The notes under the pieces were generated by a model. The model was not told where the DNA came from. It worked only from the letters and a program-made list of their open reading frames with translations, and ran no database searches. The position numbers were made by a program, and so were the translations under genes. Of a DNA stretch of 26,718 nt, positions 10,306 to 10,775 are shown in pieces. The stretch is from contig JBBHKD010000018.1 of the NCBI GenBank assembly GCA_037447605.1, forward strand, positions 1 through 26,718, read 5' to 3'. Within the stretch, counting starts at the first letter, position 1. The number at the start of each line of letters is the position of its first letter. The stretch is from Zygnema circumcarinatum SAG 698-1b. Taxonomy: Eukaryota; Plantae; Zygnematophyceae.

Positions 10306-10435
10306 TGTAACGAACCTGCCTGCAGCAGGGTTCGAACTCAGGACCTCCCGGTACCCACACCAGTGCTTTACCATTAAAAGGCAACCGCGGATGTAAGTAC
10401 TCGGCCATACAACCCATGTATAGCGTTTCGCTACA
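10306..10435 (-). repeat. TRIM 3' LTR (130 bp)
   Basis: Preceded on the minus strand by the PPT. 129/130 identical to 10646-10775. Confidence 0.97.
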
Positions 10436-10645
10436 TTCCTCCCCACCCAAACCGGGCTCGTCCTCGAGCGCAGTCAAGGTTTTTCACGAGCAGCGTTCAA
10501 GCTCCTTCAACACATGCCCAAATATACGGCCTCAGACCCTCTGGTCATAGTTGACTGCCTGGACTCAGTCAATCCGTACCATGCTCGGAGATCACGGTGT
10601 TTTTGGGGTGGATTGCAAATACCGGGCCCTTGGCTCTGATACCAA

Positions 10646-10775
10646 TGTAACGAACCTGCCTGCAGCAGGGTTCGAACTCAGGACCTCCCGGTACCCACAC
10701 CAGTGCTTTACCAGTAAAAGGCAACCGCGGATGTAAGTACTCGGCCATACAACCCATGTATAGCGTTTCGCTACA
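10646..10775 (-). repeat. TRIM 5' LTR (130 bp)
   Basis: Followed on the minus strand by T and the iMet PBS. Confidence 0.97.
10656..10728 (-). promoter_or_regulatory. tRNA-like Pol III type-2 promoter (A/B box) in the TRIM LTR (second copy at ~10316-10388)
   Basis: Minus strand reads ...TTTTA(A/C)TGGTAAAGCA...GAGGTCCTGAGTTCGAACCC. D-loop-like TGGTAAAGC and B box GTTCGAACC, with 35 nt from G18 to G53 as in a canonical tRNA. Confidence 0.7.

What the first reader, a model, noticed from the sequence alone, without database searches (positions are those of the whole stretch)
10306..10775. TRIM whose LTRs carry a tRNA-like Pol III promoter (tRNA counterpart of Cassandra)
Seen: a complete 470-bp non-coding LTR element with 130-bp LTRs (1 mismatch), iMet PBS, PPT and TSD CGCAC. 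Each LTR's sense strand contains TGGTAAAGCA...GAGGTCCTGAGTTCGAACCC, a D-loop/A-box-like motif and a strong B box with the canonical 35-nt G18-G53 spacing. The TGGGT..GAGGTCC segment recalls tRNA-Pro. Known: Cassandra TRIMs carry 5S rRNA-derived Pol III promoters in their LTRs, and I recall tRNA-derived LTRs being reported for non-autonomous Ajax elements of oomycetes. Inferred: this is a recently active, tRNA-derived, Pol III-driven TRIM, possibly new for a plant/algal genome.
Basis: partly seen in the sequence, partly recalled or inferred. Interest (0 to 1): 0.9.

Follow-up and report, generated by a model that had tools for sequence, protein, structure and literature searches.

The report
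Helenus-type miniature retrotransposon with tRNA-like LTRs
This is a real, young, high-copy miniature LTR retrotransposon whose repeats are almost entirely a decayed tRNA-like sequence; that kind of element was described in 2024 under the name Helenus, so this is a new family of a known kind, and its use of RNA polymerase III remains untested.

Summary
A 470-bp non-coding LTR element lies on the minus strand at 10306-10775. It has 130-bp LTRs with one mismatch, an iMet primer-binding site, a polypurine tract and a 5-bp CGCAC target duplication. Public DNA contigs contain the empty site.

ARAGORN at slightly relaxed thresholds finds one hit in the whole window and none in 3000 shuffles. That hit is a 98-nt class-II-like cloverleaf with A box TGGCCGAGTAC and B box AGTTCGAACCC. 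Rfam's tRNA model gives no hit, and tRNA-Pro is not supported.

The kind is already published. Helenus/TRIMp3 (Kojima 2024, PMC10886601) occurs in fungi, animals and one plant (Selaginella). Ajax is 5S-derived and found in nemerteans, not oomycetes.

What is new here:
- The family matches no published Helenus sequence.
- It probably comes from a green alga (scan notes, unchecked).
- It sits in the gag of a gypsy element that shares both LTR ends and a decayed copy of the tRNA-like T-arm, which makes that element a likely helper.

Pol III transcription is inferred only. The sole sense-strand T-run is a conserved TTTT between the boxes.

The scan's first readers flagged this same family many times on other pieces of this genome.

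The parts
10301..10305 (.). Target-site duplication CGCAC, copy next to the 3' LTR
   Evidence: the empty-site joint 10300->10776 with 5 shared letters in three DNA runs
10306..10435 (-). 3' LTR (130 nt, TG..CA). It carries the family-typical A at LTR position 62.
   Evidence: one search shows that other copies carry the 3'-LTR base at 10714
10317..10414 (-). tRNA-like module of the 3' LTR (LTR positions 22-119), a class-II-like cloverleaf called 'tRNA-Stop(tta)'
   Evidence: ARAGORN -ps finds this as its only hit in the window and finds none in 3000 shuffles
10397..10407 (-). Best A-box candidate TGGCCGAGTAC (LTR 29-39; 2 mismatches to TRGCNNAGTGG). The same motif is at 10737-10747 in the 5' LTR.
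   Evidence: the only common variant inside it (LTR 34) falls on an N position of the consensus
10328..10338 (-). B box AGTTCGAACCC (LTR 98-108; 1 mismatch to GGTTCGANNCC). The same motif is at 10668-10678 in the 5' LTR.
   Evidence: in the core (LTR 99-107) the only listed variant is G/A at the R position
10376..10379 (-). TTTT on the sense strand (LTR 57-60), repeated at 10716-10719. These are the only sense-strand T-runs of 4 or more in the element and in the 300 nt downstream.
   Evidence: no listed variant here and the deepest bin
10364..10373 (-). In ARAGORN's model it is the 3' half of the anticodon arm.
10436..10448 (-). Polypurine tract GGGTGGGGAGGAA, abutting the 3' LTR
10436..10645 (-). 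210-nt non-coding internal region. Its middle part (about 10510-10569) is specific to a subfamily.
   Evidence: low depth and a replaced stretch between 10518 and 10589 in other copies
10633..10644 (-). Primer-binding site TGGTATCAGAGC (complement of the 3' end of plant-type initiator tRNA-Met; that assignment rests on established knowledge)
   Evidence: 4 sites in the window; no shuffle of 100 reaches 4
10646..10775 (-). 5' LTR, with a private C at LTR position 62
10776..10780 (.). Target-site duplication CGCAC, copy next to the 5' LTR
740..11576 (-). Host gypsy-type LTR retrotransposon (gag, protease, RT, integrase; nested insertions) with the target duplication CTTTG at 735-739 and 11577-11581. 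It is the likely helper of the TRIM.
11403..11576 (-). Readable 5' part of the gypsy 5' LTR. It starts with TGTAGCGTAACGCTA (14 of 15 identical to the TRIM LTR start) and holds a decayed tRNA-like stretch around 11437-11504 with AGGAGGTCTTGGGCTCGATCC.
740..753 (-). 3' end of the gypsy 3' LTR, GGCAGGTTGTTACA. The TRIM LTR ends with GGCAGGTTCGTTACA.
   Evidence: these are the only three sites in the window; none in shuffles

Best explanation
This is a member of a high-copy family of Helenus-type TRIMs (TRIMp3 in the sense of Kojima 2024). It is a 470-bp non-autonomous LTR retrotransposon. Each 130-bp LTR consists of a 21-nt 5' end, a 98-nt decayed tRNA-like module and an 11-nt 3' end.

Shown here:
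- The element inserted recently, with a 5-bp duplication, into the gag of a gypsy element.
- Its LTR ends are the same as that gypsy's LTR ends.
- It carries an iMet primer-binding site and a polypurine tract.
- The tRNA-like module has an A box and a B box in the right order, and the box cores are among the least variable positions across genomic copies.

Inferred:
- The gypsy family supplies Gag, RT and integrase in trans. Its integrase would recognise the shared termini TGTAGCG.../...GTTACA.
- The element's RNA is made by RNA polymerase III from the internal A/B-box promoter. It would start near LTR position 12-22 of the 5' LTR, read through the weak TTTT at LTR 57-60, and end at the same TTTT in the 3' LTR. 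That gives an RNA of about 380 nt with a ~40-nt R region.
- The TRIM LTR looks like a contracted gypsy LTR that kept only the two ends and the tRNA-like part. It lost whatever Pol II promoter the long gypsy LTR has.

My odds: TRIM mobilised in trans, 0.95. tRNA-derived module, 0.8. This gypsy family as helper, 0.6. Pol III-made genomic RNA, 0.45. The overall confidence given is for the statement that this is a Helenus-type TRIM with a tRNA-derived LTR module.
For: Structure and boundaries: plus the empty-site joint in three DNA runs.

Copy number: 522, 247 and 214 contigs from three DNA runs lie on the stretch. Summed depth on the LTR core is thousands of times that of single-copy contigs.

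tRNA-likeness:
- ARAGORN at 95% thresholds finds the 3' LTR as its only hit in 26.7 kb and finds none in 3000 shuffles.
- The A-plus-B box arrangement occurs in 4 of 3000 shuffles.
- GGAGGTCCTGAGTTCGAACCC matches the T-arm of the published plant Helenus-1_SMo LTR at 18 of 21 positions; 1 of 2000 shuffles scores as well.

Conservation: common variants fall at LTR 22, 34, 75-78, 81, 82, 86, 95, 98, 103, 108, 113-115 and 124. Inside the boxes they hit only N or R positions or a position that is already a mismatch. The most variable part is the long variable arm.

Helper: the gypsy at 740-11576 has its own target duplication. It shares the 5' 15-mer and the 3' 14-mer of the LTR, and these occur nowhere else in the window. 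It also holds a T-arm-like stretch; 2 of 2000 shuffles match the Helenus-1_SMo LTR as well.

T-run layout. Cassandra also carries a Pol III promoter and terminator inside its LTR. The class is defined.
Against: - Rfam's tRNA model gives no hit at E<=10, even on the LTR alone. ARAGORN at default thresholds finds nothing.
- The 5' LTR is found only at 80% thresholds, where 3.7% of shuffles also score.
- The minimum-energy fold of the module is not a cloverleaf and is no more stable than shuffles (z -0.34).
- Neither A-box candidate is complete. TGGCCGAGTAC lacks the GG. TTGCC...CTGG lacks the purine and is 3 nt too long.
- The B box lacks its first G, and GTTCGAAC is palindromic, so the antisense strand also shows GGTTCGAACTC.
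- A conserved TTTT lies between the boxes and could end Pol III transcripts after about 40 nt.
- The gypsy element, which must be transcribed by Pol II, has a related module. The module could therefore be an inherited passenger.
- Interior similarity between the TRIM and gypsy LTRs is weak (56 of 3000 shuffles).
- The gypsy's primer-binding site, polypurine tract and most of its LTR are hidden by N gaps at 1000-1009 and 11393-11402.
- There is no usable RNA evidence. The one run guessed to be RNA shows the same LTR-to-flank pattern as the DNA runs.
Confidence: 0.7

Rival explanations
1. It is an ordinary TRIM transcribed by Pol II or by read-through from its surroundings. The tRNA-like stretch is then a passenger inherited from the LTR of the parental gypsy family, with no promoter role. 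At most it binds TFIIIC or acts as a structural element.
For: The gypsy LTR carries a related, more decayed module although it must use Pol II. A conserved TTTT sits between the boxes. Both A-box candidates and the B box are imperfect. There is no covariance-model hit and no cloverleaf fold. Kojima notes that many LTRs contain tRNA-like pieces. TATACA at LTR 14-19 could serve as a TATA-like element (read from the sequence).
Against: The TRIM LTR kept the tRNA-like part and little else of the much longer gypsy LTR. Its boxes are closer to consensus than the gypsy's. The box cores are conserved across many copies while the stretch between them varies. No polyadenylation signal is evident in the 130-nt LTR.
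Confidence: 0.35
2. The tRNA resemblance is a chance feature of a short GC-balanced LTR. The element is then simply a deletion derivative of the gypsy family.
For: No Rfam tRNA hit. The module is detected only with relaxed ARAGORN settings. The B-box core is a palindrome. One unrelated A/B pair also occurs by chance in the window at 16279-16347.
Against: None of 3000 shuffles gives a hit at the ARAGORN setting that finds the 3' LTR. The box pair occurs in 4 of 3000 shuffles. The T-arm matches a published tRNA-derived LTR, with 1 of 2000 shuffles scoring as well. A 6-of-7 acceptor stem closes the module.
Confidence: 0.08
3. The module is a class-I tRNA relic: D arm at LTR 54-71, a TGGGT anticodon-like loop and 35-nt G18-G53 spacing. 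The upstream TGGCCGAGTAC would then be unrelated sequence.
For: The spacing is right. TTGCC...CTGGTAAAGCAC aligns with the gypsy's TAGCGGATAGGTTAGGACGC and resembles the D arm of Helenus-1_SMo. The gypsy module is class-I-like at very relaxed ARAGORN settings.
Against: The class-I acceptor stem pairs at only 3 of 7 positions by hand, and the anticodon loop has 6 nt. ARAGORN does not report a class-I fold on the sense strand even at 60% thresholds. The first purine of the A box is missing.
Confidence: 0.25

Closest known systems
Helenus (TRIMp3), Kojima 2024, Biology 13:119 (PMC10886601)
   Same: It is a TRIM with two short LTRs, a primer-binding site, a polypurine tract and no coding capacity. 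A tRNA-like sequence with A and B boxes lies inside each LTR and is not a functional tRNA. It makes a 5-bp target duplication, as in the fungal and plant families. At 470 bp it falls within the published 311-1263 bp range. Copy number is high. Its T-arm resembles that of the only plant family, Helenus-1_SMo, at 18 of 21 positions, and both use an iMet-type primer-binding site.
   Different: Six exact words from this LTR and its primer-binding site are absent from the 2024 sequence set. The module is class-II-like and 98 nt long, with a long variable region. The host is apparently a green alga, a lineage not in the published list (scan notes only). A candidate helper shares the LTR termini and a tRNA-like relic. 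The paper found no LTR similarity between Helenus and autonomous elements and expected none.
Cassandra (5S rRNA-derived TRIM of vascular plants)
   Same: It is a TRIM whose LTRs carry a small-RNA-derived internal Pol III promoter, with a candidate terminator also inside the LTR.
   Different: The captured sequence here is tRNA-like (type 2 promoter with A and B boxes), not 5S (type 1 with A, IE and C). Pol III transcripts have been shown for Cassandra (as stated) but not here.
Ajax
   Same: It is also a TRIMp3 with a 5-bp target duplication.
   Different: Ajax is 5S-derived and known from two nemertean worms.
tRNA-derived SINEs (SINE2)
   Same: Both have a decayed tRNA head with A and B boxes as a presumed internal Pol III promoter, and both are short, high-copy and non-autonomous.
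   Different: SINEs have no LTRs, primer-binding site or polypurine tract, and they are mobilised by LINEs. This element has the full LTR-retrotransposon layout.

Membership tests
TRIM (terminal-repeat retrotransposon in miniature) | Two short direct LTRs (TG..CA), total length under about 1 kb, no coding capacity | tested here: met
   130-nt LTRs, 470 bp in total, 210-nt internal region. No ORF lies wholly inside the element (the two ORFs that reach into it run in from the flanking gag), and the ORF pieces overlapping it add no Pfam domain.
TRIM (terminal-repeat retrotransposon in miniature) | Primer-binding site after the 5' LTR, polypurine tract before the 3' LTR, target-site duplication | tested here: met
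   TGGTATCAGAGC lies one base after the LTR. GGGTGGGGAGGAA abuts the 3' LTR. CGCAC flanks both ends. Empty-site contigs exist.
Helenus (TRIMp3) | tRNA-derived sequence inside the LTR | tested here: inconclusive
   For: ARAGORN at 95% thresholds gives its only window hit here and none in 3000 shuffles, and the T-arm matches the Helenus-1_SMo LTR (1 of 2000 shuffles scores as well). Against: no Rfam tRNA hit and no default ARAGORN hit. The paper's own criterion, a Censor hit to Repbase tRNA or SINE2, could not be run.
Helenus (TRIMp3) | Box A with TRGCY and YGG; box B with GGTTC | tested here: inconclusive
   TGGCC is present at LTR 29-33 but is followed by TAC instead of YGG. The alternative TTGCC...CTGG has the YGG but lacks the purine. 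Box B reads AGTTCGAACC, so GTTC is kept and the first G is missing.
Helenus (TRIMp3) | Transcription by RNA polymerase III from the LTR | not testable with these tools
   No raw RNA reads were available and contigs cannot show starts or ends. This is also unvalidated for published Helenus families.
Cassandra / Ajax | 5S rRNA-derived sequence (box A, IE, box C) in the LTR | tested here: not met
   No 5S rRNA hit in Rfam scans of the LTR or of the window.
Functional tRNA gene | Cloverleaf that passes tRNA detectors and has a sensible anticodon | tested here: not met
   No default ARAGORN or Rfam hit. The relaxed model has a stop anticodon (tta), a weak T stem and a 26-nt variable region. The minimum-energy fold is not a cloverleaf.

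The most novel reading that the evidence does not exclude
This would be the first TRIMp3 for which the autonomous partner can be named from the LTRs themselves. The TRIM LTR would be a gypsy LTR stripped down to its two integrase-recognition ends plus a tRNA-like unit that the gypsy LTR already carried. The Pol III-driven parasite would then have arisen by deletion from its Pol II-driven helper, not by a SINE landing in an existing TRIM. This would be in a streptophyte alga, extending Helenus to a lineage where it has not been reported.
Probability: 0.3. Interest if true: 0.55.

Novelty: new member of a known kind. Interest (0 to 1): 0.35.

Why it matters
TRIMs with small-RNA-derived promoters blur the line between SINEs and LTR elements. 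They also inflate tRNA gene predictions. For Helenus, neither Pol III use nor a helper with related LTRs has been shown. This family is young and abundant, and it lies next to a candidate helper that shares its LTR ends and a relic of the same tRNA-like piece. That makes two open points testable: whether such LTRs are really Pol III promoters, and whether the element arose by deletion from an autonomous element or by SINE capture. For annotation, it means the many similar flags in this genome are one known kind of repeat.

Tried and rejected
- Rfam at gathering scores on the whole window gave nothing. Rfam at E<=10 on 581 nt, on the 130-nt LTR and on the gypsy LTR part gave no tRNA, 5S or SINE-like family, only chance-level hits.
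- ARAGORN at default thresholds gave nothing.
- RNAfold of the module gave no cloverleaf, z -0.34. The z of -4.4 for the whole element was not interpreted.
- Two metagenome scans with LTR-core and LTR-end/PBS patterns gave no hits.
- Two protein searches with retrotransposon ORFs, run to identify the organism, gave no hits in the allowed length range. An Atlas search pointed only weakly to Streptophyta. I therefore did not identify the organism myself.
- Exact-word searches of the Helenus sequence supplement for this family's motifs, and for a class-II A box, found nothing useful.
- The run guessed to be RNA (X13) does not settle expression. Its LTR-to-flank depth ratio is only 2.5-6 times that of the DNA runs, and contigs show no starts or ends.
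- The tRNA-Pro origin was rejected because the class-I fold has a poor acceptor stem and a 6-nt loop.
- A second A/B pair at 16279-16347 is a chance match inside a copia pol ORF.
- The Cassandra 2008 paper is not held in the library.

Full report
**1. What is there**

The stretch 10306-10775 is a complete miniature LTR retrotransposon that reads sense on the minus strand.
- The two LTRs (10646-10775 is the 5' LTR, 10306-10435 the 3' LTR) are 130 nt each and differ at one position, LTR 62.
- One base after the 5' LTR comes TGGTATCAGAGC. This 12-mer occurs four times in the window, against 0.15 expected. The other three sites are presumably the primer-binding sites of other LTR elements. That it complements the 3' end of plant-type initiator tRNA-Met is established knowledge, not something tested here.
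- The purine run GGGTGGGGAGGAA abuts the 3' LTR.
- CGCAC flanks both ends.
- The 210-nt interior has no coding capacity.

**2. Independent proof of insertion**

I laid contigs from four public runs of the same (coded) organism on 10250-10830. Three DNA runs contain a form that joins 10300 directly to 10776, skipping 475 bases with 5 letters shared by both sides. These are other copies of the surrounding element without the insertion. The element's ends and its 5-bp duplication are therefore confirmed from outside the window.

Between 214 and 522 contigs per DNA run lie on the stretch at 80% likeness or more. Summed depth on the LTR core reaches about 10^5, against about 60 for long single-copy contigs. 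The family is therefore abundant, roughly 10^3 LTR equivalents. The tool warns that this figure is not a copy number.

The C at LTR 62 of the 5' LTR is private to this copy; the family has the A seen in the 3' LTR. One difference in 130 nt fits a recent insertion.

**3. Is the LTR tRNA-like?**

Standard detectors find nothing:
- ARAGORN at default thresholds finds nothing in the window.
- Rfam finds nothing at gathering scores.
- Rfam finds no tRNA at E<=10 on 581 nt or on the 130-nt LTR alone.

Other tests show the resemblance is not chance:
- With thresholds lowered to 95%, ARAGORN reports exactly one hit in the whole 26.7-kb window, the 3' LTR at 10317-10414 on the minus strand. It reports none in 3000 dinucleotide shuffles of the LTR.
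- The 5' LTR differs by one base in the anticodon loop and is found only at 80% thresholds, where 3.7% of shuffles also score.
- An A box with at most 2 mismatches followed 30-80 nt later by a B box with at most 1 mismatch occurs in 4 of 3000 shuffles. In the window it occurs at three places, two of which are these LTRs. The third, at 16279-16347, is a chance pair inside a copia ORF.
- GGAGGTCCTGAGTTCGAACCC matches the T-arm region of the published plant Helenus-1_SMo LTR at 18 of 21 positions; 1 of 2000 shuffles scores as well.

**4.

ARAGORN's model is a 98-nt class-II-like cloverleaf covering LTR 22-119:
- an acceptor stem GGTTGTA/TGCAGGC with 6 of 7 positions paired
- an A box TGGCCGAGTAC at LTR 29-39
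- an anticodon arm TTGCC/GGTAA with the loop TTTTAAT (anticodon tta, a stop codon reader)
- a 26-nt variable region
- a weak T stem with the loop TTCGAAC
- a B box AGTTCGAACCC at LTR 98-108

The class-I reading is not excluded. Its G18-G53 spacing is right. The stretch also aligns with a D-arm-like TAGCGGATAGGTTAGGACGC in the gypsy LTR. Against it, its acceptor stem pairs at 3 of 7 positions, its loop has 6 nt, and ARAGORN does not report it even at 60% thresholds.

Under either reading the RNA would not be a working tRNA. The minimum-energy fold is a long hairpin, not a cloverleaf, and is no more stable than shuffles.

GTTCGAAC is palindromic, so the antisense strand also shows a B-box-like GGTTCGAACTC. 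The orientation therefore rests on the A box, the acceptor stem and the GAGGTC variable-loop motif.

**5. Conservation across copies**

The positions below come from the listed variants, which is not a full table. Common variants fall at LTR 22, 34, 75-78, 81, 82, 86, 95, 98, 103, 108, 113-115 and 124, with minor ones at 56 and 66.
- Inside the A box only position 34 varies, and it is an N of TRGCNNAGTGG.
- Inside the B-box core (99-107) only 103 varies, G/A, which is the R position.
- Position 98 is already the mismatch.
- The most variable block is the long variable region.
- LTR 35-74 shows no listed variant and has the deepest bins.

This fits selection on the boxes but is not specific to them, because the stretch between A box and anticodon arm is equally constant.

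**6. Surroundings: a likely helper**

The TRIM interrupts, at codon 201, a Retrotrans_gag ORF on the minus strand. With the insertion removed, as in the public empty-site contigs, the frame runs on for 56 more codons.

That gag belongs to a gypsy-order element. Its protease, RT and integrase lie at 3800-1432 on the minus strand. The element spans 740-11576 and has its own 5-bp duplication CTTTG.

Its LTR termini match the TRIM's:
- It begins TGTAGCGTAACGCTA; the TRIM begins TGTAGCGAAACGCTA.
- It ends GGCAGGTTGTTACA; the TRIM ends GGCAGGTTCGTTACA.
- These motifs occur nowhere else in the window and in no shuffle.

The readable 5' part of the gypsy LTR also holds AGGAGGTCTTGGGCTCGATCC, a decayed T-arm. 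It aligns with the TRIM's T-arm, and 2 of 2000 shuffles match the Helenus-1_SMo LTR as well. Beyond that the interior similarity is weak (56 of 3000 shuffles). ARAGORN sees a class-I-like fold there only at 70% thresholds, which is not significant.

N gaps at 1000-1009 and 11393-11402 hide the rest of the gypsy LTRs, its primer-binding site and its polypurine tract. The two readable LTR parts (174 and 259 nt) do not overlap, so the LTR is longer than about 430 nt.

The TRIM LTR thus looks like the gypsy LTR reduced to its two ends plus the tRNA-like piece.

**7. How it most likely works**

Reverse transcription and integration by a helper's proteins follow from the LTR/PBS/PPT layout and the absence of genes. 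The shared termini point to this gypsy family.

The source of the RNA is inference. The 130-nt LTR has lost whatever lies between the tRNA-like part and the last 14 nt of the long gypsy LTR, yet its boxes are closer to consensus than the gypsy's. That argues for use of the A/B boxes by Pol III.

On the sense strand the only runs of four or more T are the TTTT at LTR 57-60 of each LTR. There are none in the interior or in the 300 nt downstream. A Pol III genomic RNA would therefore start near LTR 12-22, pass the TTTT of the 5' LTR and stop at the TTTT of the 3' LTR. That gives about 380 nt, with R of about 40 nt and U5 carrying the B box.

The TTTT is both the model's terminator and its weakness, because it could abort most transcripts early. 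Cassandra likewise has promoter and terminator inside the LTR.

No RNA evidence could be obtained. All runs are contigs, and the one run guessed to be RNA behaves like the DNA runs.

**8. Comparison with what is known**

[quoted passage not shown] They were found in Pucciniales and some Agaricomycetes, in six animal phyla, and in one plant, Selaginella moellendorffii (LTR 120 bp, interior 85 bp, 5-bp duplication). Ajax is the 5S-derived TRIM of two nemerteans. Cassandra, Helenus and Ajax together are called TRIMp3.

The paper states:
- Pol III use by Helenus is not validated.
- Most Helenus tRNA-like parts are not functional tRNAs, and some are predicted as suppressor tRNAs.
- LTR similarity to an autonomous partner is not expected and was not found.
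- Origin by SINE insertion into a TRIM LTR is the favoured model.

Its recollection of Ajax (tRNA-derived, oomycetes) is wrong.

Six exact words from this LTR and primer-binding site are absent from the paper's sequence file, so this appears to be a different family. The library holds no paper that mentions TRIMs together with streptophyte algae.

**9. Organism**

I could not identify the organism. Follow-up notes of this scan on other pieces of the genome call it a green or streptophyte alga. I treat that as a lead.

First readers of the scan flagged the same TRIM family many times on other pieces of this genome. These flags repeat one idea and are not independent support.

**10. Verdict**

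The element is a new family of a known kind (Helenus/TRIMp3). Its added value is a candidate helper that shares the LTR ends and a tRNA-like relic. Pol III drive remains a hypothesis.

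Noticed in passing
window 740-11576 (minus strand): A gypsy-order LTR retrotransposon with the target duplication CTTTG (735-739 and 11577-11581). It is about 10.8 kb long because of nested insertions. Assembly gaps of N at 1000-1009 and 11393-11402 lie inside its two LTRs.
   Followed up: partly
window 11437-11504 (minus strand): The gypsy 5' LTR holds a decayed class-I-like tRNA stretch (TAGCGGATAGG ... 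GGCTCGATCC) followed 17 nt later by TTTT. ARAGORN finds it only at 70% thresholds, and Rfam finds nothing.
   Followed up: partly
Read laying loose ends at window 10325 and 10665: Several contigs in all four runs match the tRNA-like part, but where this LTR's last ~19 nt (sense 3' end) would follow they continue differently. The sense reading is roughly ...CCGTGGCGGTTTTGCC.... This is a related LTR family in which the tRNA-like unit is followed directly by TTTT, closer to the gypsy LTR (GTGGCGGGCA).
   Followed up: no
window 10363/10648 and 10362/10621 (joints): Single-copy-depth contigs show 'goes back' joints within the element. This suggests copies with internal LTR deletions or rearranged or tandem arrangements of the family.
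   Followed up: no
window 504-515 (+), 14187-14198 (+), 23097-23108 (-): Three more exact iMet-type primer-binding sites belong to other (copia-type) LTR elements. The window is a nest of retrotransposons with no ordinary host gene seen.
   Followed up: partly
window 504-739 / 22873-23108 and 12519-12756 / 19454-19691: Two pairs of about 237-nt inverted segments are 100% complementary. They are either very recent copies of the same copia-type element in opposite orientation or an assembly effect.
   Followed up: no
window 10417-10435 and 11560-11576 (LTR starts); 10306-10330 and 740-765 (LTR ends): Both the TRIM and gypsy LTRs can form a short hairpin at each end (TGTAGCG/CGCTACA at the start; CCTGC..GCAGG or CCTGCC..GGCAGG before the final TT(C)GTTACA). 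The stem sequences differ slightly but still pair.
   Followed up: no
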